Shown here: piece after piece, positions 35,672 through 57,044 of the stretch
How positions within the stretch are numbered: position 1 is the stretch's first letter
How the letters are laid out: every line of letters begins with the position of its first letter
From: Pelomyxa schiedti
Lineage: Eukaryota; Protista; Evosea
Length of the DNA: 64,000 nt
Reading direction: 5' to 3'
Assembly (NCBI GenBank): GCA_020536535.1
Contig: JAHLWZ010000562.1
Span: forward strand, 1 to 64,000
Notes under the pieces: generated by a model
The model's input: the letters and a program-made list of their open reading frames with translations, nothing else
Told to the model about the DNA's origin: nothing
The model's database searches: none
Made by a program: the position numbers and the translations under genes

Positions 35672-38600
35672 ATGGCCAACACCAGTGATCATAGTGACGG
35701 GAAGGAAGAATATGACTACTTCTTCAAAATCCTTTTAGTGGGAGACTCGAACGTCGGCAAGGTTGTGACAGTTCTTTCTGGAGATTTGAGTGGAATCTTA
35801 CGTTTTCCAAGACCTGCCTATTACTTCGATATGTCGACGATACGTTCACAGAAAGACGCAATAACGTCAGCATAGACTTCAAAATAAAAACACTTACTGT
35901 GGAAGGAAAGATTATTAAAGTGCAAGTGTGGGACACTGTCAGTAAGGAACGATTCACAACCTCGTGAGCTTCCTCCCTTAAGCCTTCAAGTTCCATTTTC
36001 TTGTGGCTTCTCTATTAAATATTGGAAGGTACTATCGGGGTGCTCAGGGGATACTTGTTATGTACGATACCACTGACATGGAGTCTTACACGAATGTGAA
36101 GCAATGGTTAGGAGAAATTGACCGGTACGCGCATGAGGACGTCAACAGGTACCTAGTTGGCACGAAGTGTGACTTAGAAAAGCGGCGTGCTGTTCCTACC
36201 CAATTAGCCTCAGAATTTGCTACGAGCATGATGCTCCCCTTTATTGAAACCAGTGCCAAACTTAATATAGGTGCCGATAAGCTGTTCCTCGATATGGTCT
36301 GTTCCATAAAAAACCGCGTCGCGCAGGTAGATACATCGGGGGCAACAGTACTCCCAAAACCTACCAAGGCCCCAAAAAAGAAGTTCTATGACGGAGCTGC
36401 AAAATTCTTGTGGGATCTCTACTGGCCAAGAGAAGAAGCTCTCAAATTGGCAGCACTTGAAAGGGCAAAGTCCACTGGAGAGTATATCCTTAATGAAGTA
36501 GGATTGACTAACTTGCCCAAAAATTTTGGAACTGACAAGCTTTCTACACTTACGTGCGTGAATCTCAGTAAAAACAACATGCCATACTTCCCTGTGGTAC
36601 TTTGCGCAAATCTCTCCATGACACTGGTCAAAATCATTCTCTCACACAATTATATCACAAGTGTCCCCGCGGAAATTAACAGAATGGGGGCGTTGACAAC
36701 ACTGGATCTCTCATATAACTGCATCTCAAGTCTACCTGAAGAAATTGGGTACTGCAGTCGCCTTGTGGATATCAACTTGGAGCACAACGCTTTAAACACC
36801 CTCCCTGCGACATTGTCACGCATTTTGCAAAATGCCAGTGCCACCTTAAAACTTAGCAGCAACCCAAATCTTGATGTTCCAAGTGCCATTTACTCAGATC
36901 GCGTTGCCCTTCTACACTACTTATTGCAAGCACCTTTGGGGGAAGAAACAAGGTGGAATCAGGTAAAATTAGTTATCCTTGGATCCACTGCAGTTGGGAA
37001 GACAAGTCTGTGCCAACATTTGCATGGCACATATAATAAGACCCCATTGTCAACAGATGGTGTCTCTGTCAATCTCACACCATTCACAATTAACAACGTG
37101 GAGTTTTGCTCCTACGACTTTGGTGGACAAGTAATATTGCAAGAGACTCACCAGTTTTTCCTTACAGGTTGGTACTTGTCTTCAAATGTCCTTCGATTGA
37201 TATAATATTAGGCCGCTCTCTCTTTGTACTGGTTTTTAACCTTGCCCGCATGCATGAAGCCTTTATTGAGTTCTATTTGACTCAAGTAATGAACTTGGTG
37301 ACCTCCTCTATCAAACCCCCTATTATTCTCGTTGGCACCCATGCCGATACTGTTGGATTTAAAGCACAATCTTTGTGTACAAGTATACAACAACAGTTCA
37401 CAAATCGGGGATTGAGAATTGTCAAGTGTCTGCCAGTGAACGCTCAATCAGGGACTGGCTTACCTGCTCTCAAAACATGCCTTGTAGATGTTGCCACAGA
37501 GTTTCGTTTCCTCTGAGAGAAGATCAAGTGTTCTTGGGTTGTATTACACGATAAAATCAGGTTGATTCAGCAAAAAACACAGGTTTTATGAATATCGCTA
37601 TTGCTTTCCTTACAACTTTGTTCAAGACTATGCAATGGTCACAATTTTGTGATATGGCTAGGAGTTGTGGTATCGACTCCGAAAATATTTCCAATGCAGC
37701 TCTTTTCTTCCATGAGGTGGGTTCGTTATTATATTTCAAGACCGTGGCACAGCAATTTGGTAAACATCCTTTGGTTGTAATCCAACTAACTTCCTCAAAG
37801 ATATCATTGTAATCAATCCACAATTCCTTGCTTCGCTTTTTTCTACGGTAATATCCGTGCAACAATCTTCTTTCATCAGGGATGGTATTTTAGAGGCACA
37901 ACATCTCCCCTTGATGTGGAAACAGTTTCCACCTGAACAGCACCCTTTTTTACTTAGTCTCCTAGAGTATTTCAATGTAATGATCCCTCTCAAGGCACTG
38001 AAGTATGCTCACAAAAATAACAATGCACCTCACTATTTGCTGACACTAAGATAGTGAAGCAAATTCATCGCGATATTTAATTCCATACCTTCTACCTACA
38101 AAGGAACCAACCGGAGCAATCACAGCATGGCCAACTGCACTTGCTGCCACCGATGTACAATACGGGAGGATTTACAATTTCCAATCTCTTCCAATGGGTC
38201 TATTTGGAAGGGTGCTCGTGAGGCTTCTAGGAATGAACAAGCACCATGCCAGTGGAAACTTGTTTTGGAAGAACAATGCCATCATTGTGCACAATAATAA
38301 CGTTGCCACAACACCAGCCCAACTCCATTATTTACGTGTGGAGTTTGTATGCGTGGCAGGTGCAACCCACCAACTTCATATCTATTCAAGATCTGCACGC
38401 TTCGTGCATCCCACTCTCTTCTGTGATGCAATTTCTGCTATAGACACCTGCTTGGAATCTTTCTACACCTCGATTACAAGGTCAATAACAAAGGAAGTTG
38501 TGTGCAATCACTGCCAAGTTCCGACCCACCCCGGGGATGCACAGCAGTTTTACTTCCGATTTTCAGATGTTGTGCAAGCACTGGATAGTGGAAAACGTGT

Positions 38601-41210
38601 GATGTATTGTCAAAGAGGAGGATGCGACGTTGTGGTGGACTCACTTGTACCGGACTTATCTGTATCCCATTTGAACCTTATCCCTATTTCTTCTTTGGAA
38701 AAGCAGGGAAGACTTGGTGGAGGTACATTTGGCGAAGTATTTAAATGCACCTGGGCTGGGAAAGATGCAGCCTGGAAGACAGTAAAACAACTTGTGTGTA
38801 CTGTAACAGTTCGTACTCTCAATAAGATTAATTATGTAGGACAATAATCCTAGCAGTCAAGTGGAAAGGTTCTCTGCTTTTAAGAAAGAAGCTGAACTTA
38901 TGGCCGGATTAGATTGTCCATATGTGATTCAGTTGGTTGGTGTGACAGTCCCCCCGTCAATTGGCCTTATTATGGAGGTTTTTCCCCTTGACCTGAAATT
39001 GCAATTTCACACTTGGGCCAAGTTTGCATCATTTGGCGACTTGCACTCCATGGTCCTGAGAACATCTCTTGACTGGAGACAGAAGCATCTCATTGCCCTT
39101 GATACAACAAGAGGTCTGGAATATCTTCACTCACTCTCTCCACCAATTGTTCACAGAGGTAAACCCTAACGATCCTAGGCATTTAAATCACTTTAATTCC
39201 ACAGATTTGCGTTCCCCTAACGTTTTAATATTTTCGTTAAGTGATTCCTGTGAGGTGATTCACGCCAAAATCTCTGACTTGGGTACTTTTCATTTACTTG
39301 TTTGAAAATTTTATTATTGATCTGTTCTTAGGACTCAGTCAAAAGGCAATTGGAGATATTGGCGGCACATTTCACGATAAATATCAGTGCTTTGCACCAG
39401 AAGTATTTAGTATTCACTCGAAATCATACAATGAATCATCAGATGTTTATGCTTTGGCTATGGTCTTTTTTGAACTTGCATCTGGAACATACCCATATGA
39501 TGAATTTCACATATTACCGAAGTACTGCACCTCAATTGGAAAGCTGAAGGAACAACAACTGAAATCTGATATCCTTGAAGGGTTACGGCCCACAATCCCA
39601 GAGTCTTTTTCCACAGTGTTTTCAGAGCTTCTTCCAAGGTGCTGGTCTGGTGTACCGCACGATCGGCCCAAGGCTTCACAGATTGTCTCGCGGATAGAGC
39701 AATTATTACATATCCCCCCAGTGAAATCGCATGGCAGCATACAGGAAAAGCTTCATTTAGCTGGGACCATAGCTGCGCCAGCATGTGACCTTACTCTACT
39801 ATCACAAGACCAAGTAGGTGAGGGGCAGTTACAAAAACCCGTATGGTCACTTTTGTGGGTTGGAAATATACTATTTTGTGGTTGTGAAGATGGGCAACTC
39901 GTCCTGGCCACTATATCTACCACAACAAATACAGAAGCAGTTCTTTTCACATCAATACGAGTACATGAGTCTATAATCTACACACTTGCATTTTGCGATA
40001 ATCGCGTGTGGTGTGGTTCTTGTAACGGGCTATTGCACAGCTTCTCAGTGGTTAATAACCGAGCTGAGCAACCACTGCAAATATTTCAGGATGGATGGAT
40101 TATCTCAAGCATAGGTATTGTAACAACTAATGACAAGCAATATCTATGGTGTGGGACACCAACAGATAATTGTTGCATTGCTGTGGTTGATACCACAAGG
40201 AAAATATTGCAAGATACTATCCAATTAGATAGGTTAGTTGGCGCACTGATCCCAAAAATGCTAATCCACGCAACTTCGACAGCAAACACCCTGTGTCAAG
40301 CATAAAGCAATATAAACGGTGGGTATGGGTGGGCTGTCAAGGCACCATAGTCTTATTTGATTGCACCTTGTGGCAAGCGCAAACAGAGCTGAAGATATCG
40401 GCACGACATCCCGTCTTCTCCATGCAAATACACGAGAAGAACGAGCAAATGTGGTGCGCAGCAGGTCCGTGTGTTGCCGTATGTGATGCCAACACTGCTG
40501 AAGTCATTCTGCGAATCGAAGTTGGACTTGTTGAAGGAGCTTCCACTCTGCTTGTGCCGATTGTTCAAGACTTGTGCATCGATGAGGACACCGACATTGT
40601 GTGGTGTTCCGATAGCGCTGGCCGAATGCATGCATTTTTCGCCGGGTCACTCACTAAGACTCTGTGCTCGCCGATTCCAGACCAACCGCCAGGCCGCACT
40701 GTGTTCAGGTCTCTGTGCATGTCAAGAACCAGCAATGGCAAAAAGTACTTGTGGGCGTCCACTATATCCAGCTTCAAAGCTCTAATAAAGTACCAGCCGA
40801 TATGCTCGGCCCCTGTAAAGACACCACCACCTGCAGATAATATTACTGGAAAGACCGGGGGGCAAGTTGATACACCTGCTATTTCAACTACAACTTCAAC
40901 TTGGACAGCCGCAGTTCCAAGCCCAGTTGTGTCCAGAACCATCAAAGGTATGCCTCCCATATTTTCATTTCCCTGCCATCTTCTGACTATCTGTGCAGTT
41001 TCAATCACGTACAAGGGAAGGTCCAAGGTGGTTGTTGTGGATTCCCAAATGACTCTGCAGCAGCTGCTCCTAAAGAATTTACCCCGAGGCCTCAAGCCTG
41101 AAGAGGCTGCATTTGGTACACCTGATGGGGCGGAGCTGGACTCGGACCTGACTGTAGAGGCTGCAATCAAGATAGCACCAGAGTGGCACATCATTGAGAA
41201 AGACTGGTGA
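35672..41210 (+). CDS. Roco (LRRK-type) kinase with N-terminal Rab1-like domain: Rab-LRR-Roc-COR-kinase-WD40-like-Ub-like; one in-frame TGA at 37514
   Basis: Rab: YDYFFKILLVGDSNVGK|TCLLLRYVDDTF, YYRGAQG, ETSAK. LRRs such as LTTLDLSYNCISSLPEEIG. Roc: VKLVILGSTAVGKTSL, YDFGGQ, ILVGTHAD. COR: AALFFHEVGSLLYF. Kinase: LGGGTFGEV, IVHR|DLRSPNVL, KISDLG, FAPE, SDVYA. Confidence 0.87.
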
Positions 41211-41410
41211 CCAAACAAAAAAGAAAAACTTGTTTATCCACTGACCCCAGTGCATTTTGATGATAGTTTTGGTTTTTTGTCAAAAACCTCGCTTTCCTTC
41301 CCCATTTTTCTTTCTGGCTCTCCTCACTGGAGACTCATTTTCCGGGCATTCCTTATCTTCCACAGAAAAGTGTCCGAATTGGAATTGTGGGTGTTGGTAC
41401 GGCAAGCGGG

Positions 41411-43539
41411 ATGTGCACAGGGCAATCTGTTGGGGACGGGGCAGTGGCTCTGGAAGAGGAAACTCTGCGTTCAGTCGAGAGGCACACTATAACTTTTGTC
41501 AACCTCAGCGGTATGGTTTCTTATGGCAACATTCAAATCGTCGACGAGAGTTGAACCCAATGCTTTTTTTTTTCCTGTGTTTTTTTGTTTATTTCTTTTC
41601 TTCTGTAAGCCAAGAATGTGGGACCACGTGAGGCGTGCTGTATCGCACGGGCACTGGAAAATAATCACTCTGTAGAGACTCTGAACCTGGGAAGTTACGT
41701 TGTGTACAACAAAAACCTAGGCGGAAGCACTGATAGATTGTATTGTGTTTTATTTCGTGTGTCAATGCAGGAAACAATATTTCTGATGAAGGAGTTGCGA
41801 GTTTGGCCAAATGTCTCAAAGTGAATTCTTCACTCCAAAAAGTGAAACTGAAATGTACGTCGTGTTTTAATTTTTTTTCTTTTTGCCTCACAGAACCAAC
41901 AGATAACGGGATTGGCCCAACTGGAGCCCAGGCATTGGCGGAATGTCTGCCATTCAATAGAACACTGAGAAGTCTATCCTTCAGTGGTACCAAAGTTTCC
42001 GTGCAAGAAAACCCTGTTAATCACCAGTAGAAAATGGAATAGCCACAGCTGGTGCTGAATTTATTGCTTCCACTCTTTCTGACTCCTATCTGGAAAGACT
42101 GGATGCTAGTGGTGTGTCACTATGTCCGCCCAACTGTCGCTTCCAATAGAAAATTCCAGTAAATTCCATTGAATCGACTGGTTGCCAGTGTCTCCTAAAA
42201 AGTCTTCTCTCAAATAGCCACCTAAGAAGTTTCGATCTCAGTTGTGAGTTTTTCTCCCTCAAATGTAATTTGTACTTTCTCTCTTATAGTGAACAATATT
42301 GGCGCATCAAAGGGCTCAGATATGTTGAAACAGGTTCTTGAGAGCAACAACACGTTGACAAAACTCACTTTAGGAAGTATGTGTATGCTCTTCTGTGTCA
42401 CCCCCCAATCACTTTTTCAGTGACAGCTCTGGGTGCAAAAGGTGCGCAAAAAGTAGCCGCTGCACTATCAAATAATTGCACTTTAAAAAAGCTGGACTTG
42501 ATTCGTATGCCACATCGTATTGTCTTTCACAATTCATTGCCACTAGTTAATACCATTGGTGACCAAGGTGCCTCCTGTATTGCTGAGAGTTTGACGACTA
42601 ACCATTGCCTTGAAGAACTCTTTTTAGCAAGTAGATTAATGGCACCCTATTCATTGCTTAACTGAGAAGCCTATTAGGAAATGGAATTGGGCCAGAAGGG
42701 GCTAAGAGTATTGCCGAAATGCTTTGCTTAAATCAAACGCTGAAAGTTTTAGACCTGAGCAGTATGTTTAATTGTGTGTCCCGAGTGTAATTTGATGAAG
42801 GAAATTTCGTTGGTGGTAAAAATTCAGCAGAACGAATTGCAACAGCATTATGTTCAAACAAATCGTTGAAAGTCTTAAATCTTAGCGGTATGTAATTGAG
42901 TGTTTCATCTTCTCCTCACTTGAAGCAGCAAATGGAATTCGAGCCCATGAAAAGTTTTCCGAAATGATTACTGTCAATACAACTCTGAGAGTCTTAAATA
43001 TGGCCTGTAGGGAGAATTGTAAATTAACGAAACTAAAAAAAAAAGCTAATTGCATTGACGATCCTGGGGGACAAGCCATTGCGCAAGCCCTCTTACAGAA
43101 TGAATCCTTGAGGGAACTGTACCTTCCAAGTACATATGATTGTTGAAATAAGGAAACTCACATCACTTTAAAAATAAAAAGGTAACAACATGACTCTCCT
43201 CAGTGATCCCTTTTTTGCCCAAGTAGTTGATAAATCTGATTCCCTCAATTTTTTGCACCTCAGTGGTGTGTAACCCCTTCCTTTTTCAAACTATATTTAC
43301 CCCCTTTCTCACACACCCCAAAAGAGTCCCGGCACTGGAGCTCCACAATTCAGGCCAGCATTCGGCGGCTTATCCGCGCACGCAGCGTCGCCATTGCAAT
43401 GCTGTGTGCCCATCTATCCCGCTGCGGAGCACAGAGCGGCCTCAGGGCCCTTTCCCCCGATACACTTCAAGATATAGTCTCACTCTTCAACCGGTATTCT
43501 TTCAACTTTTCACTGTGTGAGTGTGGAGCGGGTGGGTAG
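41411..43539 (+). CDS. RNI-like (NLRC3-type) leucine-rich repeat protein with C-terminal F-box-like helical motif
   Basis: About 12 repeats such as NNISDEGVASLAKCLKVNSSLQKVKL and NTIGDQGASCIAESLTTNHCLEELFL, one per exon. The start codon is uncertain. Last exon ends CECGAGG* at 43539. Confidence 0.8.
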
Positions 43540-43782: not shown

Positions 43783-46625
43783 ATGTCGAAGAAAGTCGCG
43801 TGCACCGAGTCGGACGATGTTGTGGACGAGGCAGATGACGTAAAGGTTGTGGTCAGCAAGTCTAAATCAAAGTCAGTAAGCATAGAAGTGGCGAAGGAAT
43901 CTGCAGCGGCGACATGCATTACCACATCTACATCTACGAGTTCGTCGTCGGCGTCTTCGGCGTCTGCCGCGGCGCCGTCGGCACCTCCTATGACGCTGAT
44001 CTTAAAGACGCCATCTGGGAAAGCCGTGTCTGTGGACGTTCCGCCCTCTGAAACTATTGGGGCACTGAGGACACGAGCGTGCGCTCTGGCGGGAGGTTCA
44101 GTTCCGAAGTCACGTGCCACCCTTGTCATCAGGGGAGGCAAGGTATCTATTGTCTCCGATTTGGCTTTGGGAGTAATTTCCTTTCTTTCTCGCTTATCTG
44201 TAAATGAATAGGAGTTGACGGATAACTCATTGAGCATCGTTGCTGCTGGCTTGTCAAATGAGTGCACTGTCACCCTGAAAATTGCCGACCCACCTCCGAT
44301 AGTGTGTAACCCTCCAGCTTCACTAGTAATAATAATATCTCAAGGGTCCTGACATTGAAGTAATGATCAAAATGGCCAGCGGGGAATGTTTCCAGCAGCA
44401 AATTAACGGGATAAATGACGTGCTAGATCTGCGATCCCGTGTGGCAACCCATGCTTCCGTGGCAGTTGACCGGGTTACCTTATCACTTGCCGGCACCGAA
44501 CTTACAAACGGAACTACATGCAGCGATGCCGGGCTTGTTCGTGAATGTGTAATCAACGCTGTTGTGAAAGAGGCTCCACCGACTCCAGCGGCCCCGCCAC
44601 CAATAGGTGGAATGTCGGAAGAAGAGAAACAGGCACTATTAAACAGTTTTGCTGACAGTTCCAAGGTAATAGACATCCTCTTCTGCTTTGATACAACGGG
44701 TAAATCTTCTTTGCTTTTGTTGTGCAAGCCAAGTAAACTTAAAAAGGGAGCATGTATAGTGTACTCCAACAAGTACGGGATACTATTGAGCAAGCATGTG
44801 AGCGTCTTGTTAAAGAGATTAAAGGAATTCGTATAGCTATAATGGCTATTGGTGATTACTGTGATGGTGTAACCAACTATGTCACTGAGTACATTGATCT
44901 TTCAAATGACGCCAAAAAGCTCTCCAAATTTGTTCGTGAGGTAAAAGCTACCAGTGGTGGGGATACTCCAGAAGCTTATGAATGGTTTGAACCTAAAATC
45001 GGTTTCGAGGAATTCACCAATAGTACAGGGGTCTGAGACAAGCGAGATCTCTGTCATGGAGACCTGACTCTTCCAAAGCACTTGTAATGATTGCGGATTC
45101 CCCACCTCATCCGCCGTCATATACGAAGGAGAAGATCTGGTGGAAGACCGAAGCAGACAAACTTGCACAAATAGGTGTAAAAATCTACGGTGTGCAAGCT
45201 ATGCCAAATCCTCAATATAGAAGTTTCTTTGAGGAGCTTGCCAGGCGTACGGGAGGACTGTATGTTCCGTTCAGCAACTTCAACTTAATTACCGAAATGT
45301 TCCTTGCTGGTACATATACTTTGGAATTATGTACGTTAACTTTACCCCAGTGTGTTACCGTGAGGCCAATAAAGCAAAGCTGGAGAAATTCGCTGCGGAA
45401 ATGAAGGCAGATGGTAAAATGAACGAAGCAATGACTCAAATGATTGACACACTATCTCAGCCAGACATGGAAAAGAAAACGTAGTTTTCATGTTATTCTC
45501 CTCTCCTCTCTCATCACCTACTGTAGAAAAGACAAGAGTAAACCTAAAGAGTCGGAAACAACTTCCACAACAACCACTTCAGCCCCCAAAACACCTAAGT
45601 ACAATCCAAGTTGCCATGAGGATTGGTGGTCCCGAAAAAATGATCATGGTTCCCCCCAGTACCGACTTGTGATGGGGAAGTGGCTTCCAACAACAAACAT
45701 TCTTCCATCTTTCGAGGATATTGTGGATGGAATTTCCGACATATTGCCTTCCCTACCATCATTCTCATCTTCAACTCATTACTCTCCTCCTCCTACTGCA
45801 TCTGGTACCGAACAAAAAATTGTTGTGTTGGGTGCTGGTGGTGTGGGCAAATCTTCTATTGTGATTCAATACATCCAGAGCCACTTGTTTGTCTTCTATT
45901 GGGACCAATTTATAAAGCACTAACATCTTCCCTAGTATAGAGGAATATGATCCAACCATTGAAGACTCTTATGTAAAAGAACTAGCATCTATTATGTACT
46001 AACTGTAAGTAGAGAAAGCAAGTTGTAGTAGATGGGTCTACTGTCATGTTGGATATCCTGGATACCGCAGGTATTTCCTTACTTTGTTGGTAGCAAGGTT
46101 TACTAATTCCCAGAAGGTCAAGAAGAGTTTTCTGCCATACGTGATCAGTGAGTCTCTTCTTATTTTTGCAAACTCTTACTATGCCAAGGTACATACGAAC
46201 TGGAATGGGGTTTATTGTTGTCTATGCAGTGAACAGCCCGTCTTCATTTGATGAAGCTCCAACCTTTCACGAGCAAATTCTAAGAATTAAGGATACTGAC
46301 CAAGTTCCATGTAAGCTGTACTTTTTTGACTGCGAAATGATAACTCCGGGCAGGTGTTATCGTAGGAAACAAAATAGACCTGGAATCTGAAAGGAAAATA
46401 ACCACAGCACAAGGAACGGAACTAGCCAAGAAGCTCAACGCGCCTTTCTTCGAGTCAAGTGCCAAAACGCGGATAAACATTGAGGAAACCTTCACAGGTT
46501 TTACCCCTTTTGTTGTGTCATAGGCTAACCTGGTGCCAGAGCTATCAAGGCAAATAACAGCCAAGGCCAAAGCACCCACACCCCCATCCAGTTCTTCTTC
46601 TTCAGGAGGCTGCCTTGTGTGTTGA
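43783..46625 (+). CDS. UBL-UBL-vWA-Ras fusion protein ending in CaaX-like CLVC
   Basis: UBL1 MTLILKTPSGKAVSVDVPPSETIGALR; UBL2 VMIKMASGECFQQQI. vWA DILFCFDTTG|SM, IGDYCD, GGDTPEAYE. Ras KIVVLGAGGVGKS, YDPTIEDSY, LDTA|GQEEFSAIRDQ, VGNKIDL, ESSAK, then GGCLVC*. Confidence 0.87.

Positions 46626-52251: not shown

Positions 52252-57044
<4,793 letters not shown>

What the first reader, a model, noticed from the sequence alone, without database searches (positions are those of the whole stretch)
35672..41210. Rab1-like GTPase domain fused in cis to an LRRK-type Roco kinase
The Rab C-terminus (ETSAKLNIGADKLF...) continues without a stop or intron through a linker into LRRs and the Roc P-loop within one 400-codon ORF (36003-37205), so the fusion is seen directly. 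Mammalian LRRK1/2 phosphorylate Rab switch II and are recruited by Rabs (established). Here a Rab module is part of the kinase, giving two G domains in one chain. It could act as a built-in substrate, autoinhibitor or membrane-targeting unit (inference).
Basis: partly seen in the sequence, partly recalled or inferred. Interest (0 to 1): 0.75.

Follow-up and report, generated by a model that had tools for sequence, protein, structure and literature searches.

The report
Rab1-like domain fused to Roco kinase
In the anaerobic amoeba Pelomyxa schiedti, a worn-down copy of the trafficking switch Rab1 is built into the front of an LRRK2-type Roco kinase, but the copy in this window carries a premature stop codon and the intact version lies on another contig.

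Summary
One exon (36029-37167, inside ORF 36003-37205) runs without a stop from the second half of a Rab1-type G domain through a conserved linker and leucine-rich repeats into the Roc P-loop. RNA contigs cover this stretch unspliced and confirm four downstream introns.

My 13-exon model (35672-41210, 1651 codons) reads: Rab1-like, linker, LRR, Roc, COR-A/B, intact Roco4-like kinase, beta-rich region, ubiquitin-fold tail.

Three corrections:
- **Premature stop.** Codon 562 (37514-37516), between Roc and COR, is an in-frame TGA, also present in the RNA. The one paralog (contig C1001, about 76% identical) has CGA (Arg) there and no internal stop in its 1641 codons.
- **Not a working Rab.** The P-loop, G4, G5 and the effector-binding triad are kept. 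The switch I Thr, the DxxG Gly, the catalytic Gln and the prenylation tail are lost. It evolves about 4-5 times faster than the rest.
- **Rare.** I found this layout only in these two genes.

Best reading: a cis version of the Rab1A-activates-Roco2 link known from Dictyostelium. This is inferred, not shown.

The scan noted other Roco genes with two G domains elsewhere in this genome; I did not test them.

The parts
35672..35761 (+). Exon 1: start codon and Rab-like P-loop (GDSNVGK, followed by T in exon 2)
   Evidence: Sequence read. GT at 35762. The paralog's annotated protein P0001 has an intron at the same place and phase. No RNA contig covers this exon.
35812..35963 (+). Exon 2: Rab-like switch I (Thr replaced by Asn, one residue shorter), interswitch, and switch II WDTVSKERF (DxxG Gly to Ser, catalytic Gln to Lys)
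   Evidence: Pfam Ras E 1.6e-10. Best solved-structure hits are Rab1A/B at E 1.6e-14, with the alignment printed.
36029..36317 (+). Rab-like C-half (start of exon 3): YYRG, G4 as TKCD, G5 as ETSAK
   Evidence: Pfam Ras E 4.4e-31. Rab1A hit at 112 bits, E 1.8e-31. RNA depth starts at about 36129.
36318..36491 (+). Linker of 58 residues replacing the Rab hypervariable and prenylation tail; its C-terminal two thirds are strongly conserved in the paralog
   Evidence: Window-versus-paralog alignment: 68% identity, dN/dS about 0.20. Covered by an unspliced RNA contig, 36260-36591.
36492..36941 (+). Leucine-rich repeats of the SHOC2 type
   Evidence: Pfam LRR_8, LRR_1 and LRR_4. The strongest eukaryotic solved-structure hits are SHOC-2 at E about 1e-41.
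36942..37513 (+). Roc G domain with motifs GSTAVGKTS, DFGGQ and THAD, interrupted by intron 37168-37211
   Evidence: Pfam Roc E 9.7e-16. The intron is confirmed by an RNA contig. Motif positions.
37514..37516 (+). In-frame TGA at codon 562, between the last Roc helix and the start of COR; the paralog has CGA (Arg) here
   Evidence: Paralog codon. The RNA contig over 37342-37580 shows no difference from the DNA. No allelic contig. No SECIS match downstream.
37517..38682 (+). COR-A and COR-B (end of exon 4, exons 5 and 6, most of exon 7); introns 37583-37626, 37760-37800 and 38003-38054
   Evidence: Pfam COR-A pieces at E 1.9e-4 and 2.8e-7, and COR-B at 27.7 bits against a cut-off of 27. Intron 37583-37626 is seen in RNA. 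Intron 37760-37800 is retained in that same contig and rests on frame and the paralog.
38683..39723 (+). Protein kinase (TKL, Roco type): Gly loop, Lys in AAWK, alpha-C Glu, HRDLRSPN, DLG, APE; introns 38794-38839, 38978-39022, 39159-39204 and 39283-39331
   Evidence: Pfam PK_Tyr_Ser-Thr and Pkinase on three exons. Best solved relative is the Dictyostelium Roco4 kinase, E 1.7e-14. Splice sites rest on sequence and the paralog.
39724..40808 (+). Beta-rich region after the kinase, possibly a WD40-like propeller; intron 40233-40282
   Evidence: Support is weak: Pfam WD40 E 0.099; the LRRK1 C-terminal region at E 0.14; the AlphaFold model is all-beta but has pLDDT 32. The region is 83% identical to the paralog. 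The intron is seen in RNA.
40809..40947 (+). Ser/Thr/Pro-rich low-complexity linker
   Evidence: 42% identity to the paralog, dN/dS about 0.44.
40999..41210 (+). Exon 13: C-terminal 70-residue beta-grasp (ubiquitin-like) domain and TGA stop at 41208-41210; preceded by intron 40948-40998
   Evidence: AlphaFold pLDDT 87.7. Foldseek TM 0.75-0.81 to UFM1 and ubiquitin, and 0.72 to the SIN1 Ras-binding domain. The intron is seen in RNA.

Best explanation
Shown:
- This is a real, transcribed and spliced gene of Pelomyxa schiedti.
- Its product starts with a Rab1-derived G domain joined by a conserved 58-residue linker to LRR, Roc, COR, an intact kinase, a beta-rich region and a ubiquitin-fold tail.
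- The Rab1-like module keeps the parts that hold a nucleotide (P-loop, TKCD, SAK) and the Phe/Trp/Tyr triad that Rabs use to bind partners.
- It has lost the parts needed to hydrolyse GTP and to switch (switch I Thr, DxxG Gly, catalytic Gln), and it has lost the lipid-anchor tail.
- This window copy carries a CGA-to-TGA nonsense codon after Roc. As assembled it encodes only Rab-like, LRR and Roc (561 residues). The paralog on contig C1001 encodes the whole chain.

Inferred:
- The module is a permanently attached, non-switching Rab1 mimic that acts in cis on the neighbouring LRR and kinase. It would be the covalent version of the Dictyostelium link in which Rab1A-GTP binds and activates the LRR-Roc-COR-kinase protein Roco2.
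- It would either hold the kinase in a Rab-engaged state or serve as a tethered lid.
For: - **Fusion in one exon.** Pfam Ras, LRR and Roc fall on one ORF, with unspliced RNA contigs over the junction and spliced contigs downstream.
- **Rab1 origin.** The top solved-structure hits are all Rab1/Ypt1. The nearest free Rab in the same genome (C521) is 69% identical over the switch II-to-G4 exon.
- **Motif losses.** They are read directly from the printed alignments and from the window-versus-paralog alignment.
- **Old fusion under selection.** The paralog shares all 12 intron positions. dS is saturated at about 1.4. dN/dS is 0.07-0.10 for LRR, Roc, COR and kinase. G1, G4, G5 and the triad are kept in both copies although the domain is only 43% identical.
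- **Kinase looks active.** Lys, Glu, HRD, DLG and APE are present, and it is closest to the Dictyostelium Roco4 kinase.
- **Nonsense codon.** TGA here versus CGA in the paralog; it is present in the RNA; CpG observed/expected is 0.56.
- **Mechanistic precedent.** Rab1A-Q67L pulls down Roco2, dominant-negative Rab1A lowers its activity, and deleting the LRR region makes Roco2 constitutively active (PMC3128523).
Against: - No direct evidence that the Rab-like domain touches the LRR, Roc or kinase; the one complex prediction gave no verdict.
- The Rab-like domain evolves 4-5 times faster than the rest (dN 0.48 against about 0.10), which could mean it is decaying rather than working.
- The 5' exons 1-2 have no RNA coverage.
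- This copy's frame is broken, so it may do nothing.
- Whether the Roco part is orthologous to Dictyostelium Roco2 was not tested.
- Nucleotide binding by a domain lacking the switch I Thr and the DxxG Gly is assumed, not shown.
Confidence: 0.55

Rival explanations
1. This window copy is a recently killed gene or a null allele. The CGA-to-TGA change truncates it after Roc, the transcript is a leftover, and only the C1001 paralog works. This concerns this copy only and is compatible with the family-level explanation above.
For: In-frame TGA at codon 562, with Arg (CGA) in the paralog. The same TGA is in the RNA contig. No second allele in the assembly. No SECIS-like element downstream. The genome is CpG-depleted (0.56-0.61), so CGA-to-TGA is the expected kind of hit.
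Against: The 1089 codons after the TGA have no further stop or frameshift, and all eight downstream introns keep GT-AG. The change must therefore be very recent, polymorphic or read through. The gene is still transcribed and spliced. A 561-residue Rab-like, LRR and Roc product could itself be functional.
Confidence: 0.4
2. Built-in substrate or pseudosubstrate. The kinase phosphorylates the tethered Rab-like switch II Thr, as LRRK2 does to free Rabs, and this autophosphorylation sets the activity or the partners of the protein.
For: Both copies keep Thr at the position that aligns with the Rab1A switch II Thr in RFRT, although the rest of switch II (DTAGQ) is destroyed in different ways: ERF-TTS in the window and DRFRTPT in the paralog. 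That LRRK2 phosphorylates this switch II Thr in Rab8 and Rab10 is established knowledge; the review read confirms only that Rabs are LRRK2 substrates.
Against: There are only two sequences. Switch II is three residues shorter in the window copy and the flanks differ. No evidence that amoebozoan Roco kinases phosphorylate Rabs; in Dictyostelium the reported link runs from Rab1A to Roco2.
Confidence: 0.15
3. Targeting module. The Rab1-like surface binds Rab1 partners (effectors, GEF or GAP) and so brings the kinase to ER-Golgi membranes without needing a lipid anchor.
For: The Phe/Trp/Tyr(Phe) triad used by Rabs for effector binding is kept in both copies, as are RabF4 (YYRG/FRG) and the Rab1-like alpha-3 region.
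Against: The switch regions that effectors read are heavily altered and differ between the two copies. There is no prenylation motif, since the sequence runs on into the linker.
Confidence: 0.15
4. Gene-model artefact: a separate small Rab gene and a separate Roco gene that merely abut.
For: Exons 1-2 lack RNA coverage. The public annotation names the paralog only as a Ypt/Rab-like GTP-binding protein.
Against: No stop lies between the Rab G5 motif and the Roc P-loop within one exon. An RNA contig spans 36260-36591, from G5 into the LRR. The same colinear exon is conserved at 71% in the paralog. The public protein P0001 itself contains Rab, LRR and Roc.
Confidence: 0.03

Closest known systems
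Dictyostelium discoideum Roco2 (QkgA) regulated by Rab1A (Kicka et al. 2011, PMC3128523)
   Same: An amoebozoan LRR-Roc-COR-kinase protein functionally coupled to Rab1. GTP-locked Rab1A binds it and raises its activity, and its N-terminal LRR region is autoinhibitory. The Pelomyxa module likewise lacks the catalytic Gln.
   Different: There the Rab is a free, prenylated, switching protein acting in trans. Here a degenerate, tail-less Rab1 copy is part of the chain. Orthology of the Roco parts was not tested.
Dictyostelium Roco4 (LRR-Roc-COR-kinase-WD40)
   Same: Closest solved kinase (E 1.7e-14). It has the same HRDLRSPN catalytic loop, the same core order, and probably a C-terminal beta-propeller.
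   Different: As known from the literature, Roco4 has no N-terminal G domain and no ubiquitin-fold tail. The WD40 assignment here is only weakly supported.
Human LRRK2 and LRRK1
   Same: Roc-COR-kinase core with LRRs. LRRK2 is recruited or activated by Rabs such as Rab29 and phosphorylates Rab switch II (review PMC6337361).
   Different: LRRK1/2 bind Rabs in trans through ARM/ANK regions that this protein lacks. Here the LRRs follow the Rab-like domain after 58 residues.
SHOC2-MRAS (an LRR protein binding a GTP-bound Ras-family GTPase)
   Same: The LRRs here are most similar to SHOC-2 among eukaryotic solved structures. That SHOC2 binds a small GTPase on its LRR surface is from my own knowledge.
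   Different: No Roc, COR or kinase, and a trans complex. The similarity is in repeat type only.
Nucleotide-binding pseudo-GTPases such as Rnd proteins and RhoH
   Same: Small-GTPase fold with the nucleotide pocket kept and the catalytic residues replaced, used as a constitutive interaction module.
   Different: Those keep the DxxG Gly and lipid anchors, and they are stand-alone proteins.

Membership tests
Roco family | Roc (Ras of complex proteins) G domain | tested here: met
   Pfam PF08477 at E 9.7e-16 on exon 3. Motifs GSTAVGKTS, DFGGQ and THAD.
Roco family | COR domain immediately C-terminal of Roc | tested here: met
   COR-A profile positions 21-60 and 66-130 fall on exons 5 and 6. COR-B scores 27.7 bits against a cut-off of 27 on exon 7. 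A whole-genome scan also scores this locus over the COR-A cut-off.
Roco family | Roc and COR in one uninterrupted reading frame | tested here: not met
   In-frame TGA at 37514-37516 in this copy. The feature is met in the paralog on C1001, which has CGA and a 1641-codon model without an internal stop.
Roco kinases (group with LRR and kinase) | LRRs N-terminal of Roc and a protein kinase C-terminal of COR with catalytic residues | tested here: met
   LRR_8 at E 1.4e-10. Kinase Pfam hits on three exons. Lys, alpha-C Glu, HRD, DLG and APE are present.
Rab GTPases, Rab1 subfamily | Closest sequence similarity to Rab1/Ypt1 | tested here: met
   All top solved-structure hits are Rab1A, Rab1B or Ypt1, with a margin of 112 bits against 84 for the next subfamily.
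Rab GTPases, Rab1 subfamily | Intact G2 (switch I Thr) and G3 (DxxG followed by the catalytic Gln) | tested here: not met
   The printed alignment to Rab1A shows Thr to Asn, and WDTAGQ changed to WDTVSK. The paralog has WDLLLN.
Rab GTPases, Rab1 subfamily | C-terminal Cys prenylation motif after a hypervariable tail | tested here: not met
   After the last Rab helix the chain continues into the linker and LRRs. The protein ends in EKDW.
Rab GTPases, Rab1 subfamily | Guanine-nucleotide binding and GTP hydrolysis | not testable with these tools
   G1, G4 (TKCD) and G5 (SAK) are conserved in both copies. Biochemistry is needed.
Metazoan LRRK1/LRRK2 | ANK (and, in LRRK2, ARM) repeats N-terminal of the LRRs | tested here: not met
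   The N-terminus is the Rab-like domain (residues 1-177), followed by a 58-residue linker and then the LRRs. No ANK or ARM Pfam hit.
Metazoan LRRK2 / Dictyostelium Roco4 | C-terminal WD40 propeller | tested here: inconclusive
   Pfam WD40 E 0.099. LRRK1 C-terminal region E 0.14. The half-domain model is all-beta but has pLDDT 32.

The most novel reading that the evidence does not exclude
The Rab1-like module is an integrated decoy, and the Roco protein works like an NLR-type sensor. It would display a copy of Rab1, a favourite target of effectors from intracellular bacteria. Modification or binding of that bait would then switch on the Roc-COR-kinase. Three observations fit this but do not show it. 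The bait domain evolves fast beside a strongly conserved signalling core. Roco genes are greatly expanded in this genome, with at least 74 COR-A matches. Two further genes in the same 64 kb window join a housekeeping protein to other domains: a ubiquitin-like protein with a Ras end, and an actin fusion (first-reader notes).
Probability: 0.1. Interest if true: 0.85.

Novelty: new variant of a known kind. Interest (0 to 1): 0.55.

Why it matters
Rab GTPases and Roco kinases are linked in humans (LRRK2 and Parkinson's disease) and in Dictyostelium (Rab1A and Roco2). How a Rab engages the LRR side of a Roco kinase is still unclear.

A natural gene fusion is independent evolutionary evidence that Rab1 and this kinase class work as a pair. 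It also offers a compact, single-chain system for studying the contact. The module keeps its nucleotide pocket but not its switch, which makes it a natural locked Rab1.

The public annotation misses the layout. It names the paralog only 'GTP-binding protein yptV1' and truncates it at 629 residues.

The value is limited for four reasons:
- I found the fusion in only two genes of one species.
- This copy is interrupted by a stop codon.
- The Rab-like part is the fastest-evolving part of the protein.
- No contact or activity has been shown.

Tried and rejected
1. **Variant genetic code for the TGA.** ORF lengths grow most when TGA is ignored, but that is what base composition predicts. The gene's own stop is TGA, and the paralog has Arg at the site. 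Rejected.
2. **Selenocysteine.** No SECIS-like match in 41100-41900, and Arg in the paralog. Rejected.
3. **A 45-nt in-frame intron (37484-37528, GT..AG) that would remove the TGA.** No RNA support. The stretch is conserved as coding sequence in the paralog and forms the end of the last Roc helix and the start of COR. Considered unlikely.
4. **An allelic contig with CGA.** None; only the locus itself and the 76% paralog match.
5. **Complex prediction of the paralog's Rab-like domain (P0001 1-190) against its LRR-Roc (200-570).** No verdict (score 0.00, controls not run). This is evidence neither for nor against binding.
6. **Folding the post-kinase exon 12.** pLDDT 32, unusable for fold search.
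7. **Looking for the same N-terminal module in five other Roco loci of this genome (C1714, C116, C725, C691/C1174, C388).** tblastn finds only LRR-to-kinase similarity, starting at model residue about 276, and none to residues 1-190. The upstream ORFs show no obvious G domain.
8. **Wider searches.** An exhaustive HMMER search of 1.84 billion cluster representatives with exon 3 found one protein among the best 150 with colinear Rab, LRR and Roc: P0001, the paralog. A word-indexed search with P0001 found only bacterial and archaeal LRR-Roc-COR proteins covering about 60% of the query. That search sees only proteins of 346-1100 residues.
9. **A paper on Rab diversity in Amoebozoa (PMC9707542).** Not held in the library.

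The joined 1651-residue model has no reference, so I never sent it to any database, fold or complex tool. Those searches went exon by exon by reference, or used P0001. The joined model, with X at the TGA, was used only inside local scripts for tblastn against the paralog and for dN/dS.

Full report
**What is there**

The window is eukaryotic, with short GT-AG introns of 41-65 nt. The closest database protein is annotated as a Pelomyxa schiedti protein, so the genome is that anaerobic amoeba, as earlier notes of this scan also say.

Pfam places three families on it in order: Ras (residues 9-103, matching the C-terminal 95 positions of the profile, E 4.4e-31), leucine-rich repeats, and Roc (322-389, E 9.7e-16). 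The fusion is therefore visible within one exon.

**Gene model**

From the sequence I built a 13-exon model on the + strand:

| Exon | Coordinates |
|---|---|
| 1 | 35672-35761 |
| 2 | 35812-35963 |
| 3 | 36029-37167 |
| 4 | 37212-37582 |
| 5 | 37627-37759 |
| 6 | 37801-38002 |
| 7 | 38055-38793 |
| 8 | 38840-38977 |
| 9 | 39023-39158 |
| 10 | 39205-39282 |
| 11 | 39332-40232 |
| 12 | 40283-40947 |
| 13 | 40999-41210 |

The model has 1651 codons plus the stop.

- Contigs of a single-cell RNA run from the same study splice out exactly 37168-37211, 37583-37626, 40233-40282 and 40948-40998.
- They lie unspliced on 36260-36591 (Rab G5 motif, through the linker, into the first LRRs) and on 36696-37165.
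- One RNA contig retains the 41-nt intron 37760-37800, so partly spliced RNA is present in the run.
- Exons 1-2 and seven other introns have no RNA support. They rest on frame, homology and the paralog.

**Domains, from N to C**

- **Rab1-like G domain (residues 1-177).**
- **Linker (178-235).**
- **LRRs (236-385).** They are of the SHOC2 type.
- **Roc (386-561).** The motifs GxxxxGKT, DxxGQ and THxD are present.
- **COR-A and COR-B (563-905)**.
- **Protein kinase (906-1190).** The Lys, alpha-C Glu, HRDLRSPN, DLG and APE are present. The Dictyostelium Roco4 kinase is by far the best solved relative (E 1.7e-14).
- **Beta-rich region (1191-1535).** It may be a WD40-like propeller, but the support is weak.
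- **Ser/Thr/Pro-rich linker (1536-1581).**
- **70-residue tail (1582-1651).** It folds with high confidence (pLDDT 88) as a beta-grasp, ubiquitin-like domain. TM is about 0.8 to UFM1 and 0.72 to the SIN1 Ras-binding domain.

Codon 562 (37514-37516) is TGA, in frame. It sits between the last Roc helix (EFRFL) and the COR start (EKIKCSW).

- The RNA contig covering 37342-37580 shows no difference from the DNA, so this is not an assembly error.
- The paralog has CGA (Arg) at exactly this codon, with identical flanks. The window copy therefore carries a C-to-T change at a CpG.
- The gene and the window are CpG-depleted (observed/expected 0.56-0.61, with TpG/CpA excess).
- There is no second allele in the assembly and no SECIS-like element downstream.
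- The 1089 codons after the TGA have no other stop or frameshift.

The event is therefore recent, polymorphic or read through. As assembled, this copy encodes Rab-like, LRR and Roc only.

**The paralog**

A six-frame search of the whole assembly finds one close relative, on contig C1001. It is 71% identical over the whole of exon 3 and has no stop.

- My spliced model of it has 13 exons and 1641 codons with no internal stop. It has introns at all 12 corresponding positions.
- Its first 620 or so residues are identical to the public protein P0001. That protein is named 'GTP-binding protein yptV1 [Pelomyxa schiedti]' and is 629 aa long, a truncated annotation that overlooks the Roco part.
- Between the two copies dS is saturated (about 1.4), so the duplication, and hence the fusion, is old.
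- dN/dS is 0.07-0.10 for LRR, Roc, COR, kinase, the beta-rich region and the tail.
- The Rab-like domain is only 43% identical, with dN 0.48 against about 0.10 elsewhere.

**What kind of Rab**

Both halves of the domain hit Rab1A, Rab1B and Ypt1 first among solved structures, with a clear margin over Rab10, Sec4 and Rab8. Within the genome the nearest free Rab is a Rab1-like gene on C521, 69% identical over the switch II-to-G4 exon. It shares the distinctive YYRGAQGI and TDME.YTNVKQWLGEI stretches. The module therefore probably came from a lineage-specific Rab1-like paralog.

Changes seen in the printed alignments:
- The switch I Thr is Asn, with a one-residue deletion.
- DTAGQ has become DTVSK; in the paralog it is DLLLN.
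- Switch II is three residues shorter in the window copy.
- N of NKxD is Thr in both copies.
- There is no Cys tail.

Kept in both copies:
- the P-loop GxxxxGKT;
- the block VGTKCDLE;
- the SAK motif;
- the Phe/Trp/Tyr(Phe) triad;
- a Thr at the position of the LRRK2-type switch II phosphosite.

I read this as a nucleotide-binding but non-switching, non-prenylated pseudo-GTPase.

**How rare it is**

- The genome has at least 74 COR-A matches. Among the Ras-family matches listed, only this locus and C1001 have one just upstream of a COR-A match on the same strand. These are lower bounds, because only 150 of 1009 Ras candidates were scored.
- Five other Roco loci show no similarity to residues 1-190 of the model.
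- In an exhaustive HMMER search of 1.84 billion cluster representatives, only P0001 has colinear Rab, LRR and Roc among the best 150.
- The Roco review I read lists ANK, ARM, RasGEF, cNB, GRAM, myotubularin, PTP and DEP as accessory domains, but no small GTPase.
- Earlier notes of this scan report other Roco genes with N-terminal Ras- or Rac-like pseudo-GTPases elsewhere in this genome. I did not locate or test those.

**How it most likely works**

In Dictyostelium, also an amoebozoan, three results tie Rab1A to Roco2 (PMC3128523):
- GTP-locked Rab1A pulls down Roco2.
- Dominant-negative Rab1A lowers Roco2 activity.
- Deleting the N-terminal LRR region makes Roco2 constitutively active.

The Pelomyxa gene puts a hydrolysis-dead Rab1 copy 58 residues in front of the LRRs. 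My best inference is that it is a tethered Rab1 mimic acting in cis on the LRR and kinase. The alternatives are a built-in substrate, a targeting module that uses Rab1 partners, and an integrated decoy on an NLR-like sensor. Prenylation-based targeting is excluded.

None of these was tested. The one complex prediction returned no verdict.

The joined protein model has no reference, so it was not sent to any search, fold or complex tool. Those searches went exon by exon or used P0001. The joined model, with X at the TGA, was used only in local scripts.

**Verdict**

It is a new variant of a known kind: a Roco kinase with a Rab1-derived pseudo-GTPase as an accessory domain.

Noticed in passing
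window 37514-37516: CGA-to-TGA nonsense change at a CpG in an otherwise intact, transcribed 1651-codon gene. The window is CpG-depleted (observed/expected 0.61, TpG/CpA 1.25), which points to deamination pressure on this genome.
   Followed up: yes
window 40999-41207: The last 69 residues fold confidently (pLDDT 88) as a beta-grasp domain. It resembles UFM1 and ubiquitin, and also the SIN1 Ras-binding domain, so a Ras-binding-type fold may sit at the opposite end of a protein that starts with a Rab-like domain.
   Followed up: partly
window 37760-37800: A 41-nt intron is retained in an RNA contig that has correctly removed the neighbouring 44-nt intron, so partly spliced RNA is common in this single-cell transcriptome.
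   Followed up: partly
window 44363-45923 and 53176-53814: On the same strand downstream lie an ORF with a ubiquitin-family hit, an ORF ending in the first 23 positions of the Ras profile, and an ORF with a strong actin hit (E 3e-46). First-reader notes describe these as fusion genes (Ubl-vWA-Ras and actin-vWA). That would make three fusions of housekeeping proteins within 64 kb.
   Followed up: partly
window 41743-42665: Just downstream of the gene lie short ORFs with RNI-type leucine-rich repeats (LRR_6, E 1.1e-7), probably exons of another LRR protein gene.
   Followed up: no
G000 whole genome: At least 74 COR-A matches on about 60 contigs, several in tandem (for example six on C388), so the Roco family is greatly expanded in Pelomyxa schiedti.
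   Followed up: partly
L003 (C731), L005 (C521), L010 (C926), L013 (C123), L017 (C1422): A group of Rab1-like genes sharing LVANKTDL or LVASKTDL and TDMETYTNVKQW-type motifs. Some have degenerate switch II or in-frame stops, so Rab1-like paralogs are expanded in this lineage, some apparently decaying.
   Followed up: no
L021 (C1001) / protein P0001: The public protein for the paralog stops at 629 residues with a short non-homologous tail, apparently from reading into the retained fifth intron. The real gene continues for about 1000 more codons through COR and the kinase.
   Followed up: yes
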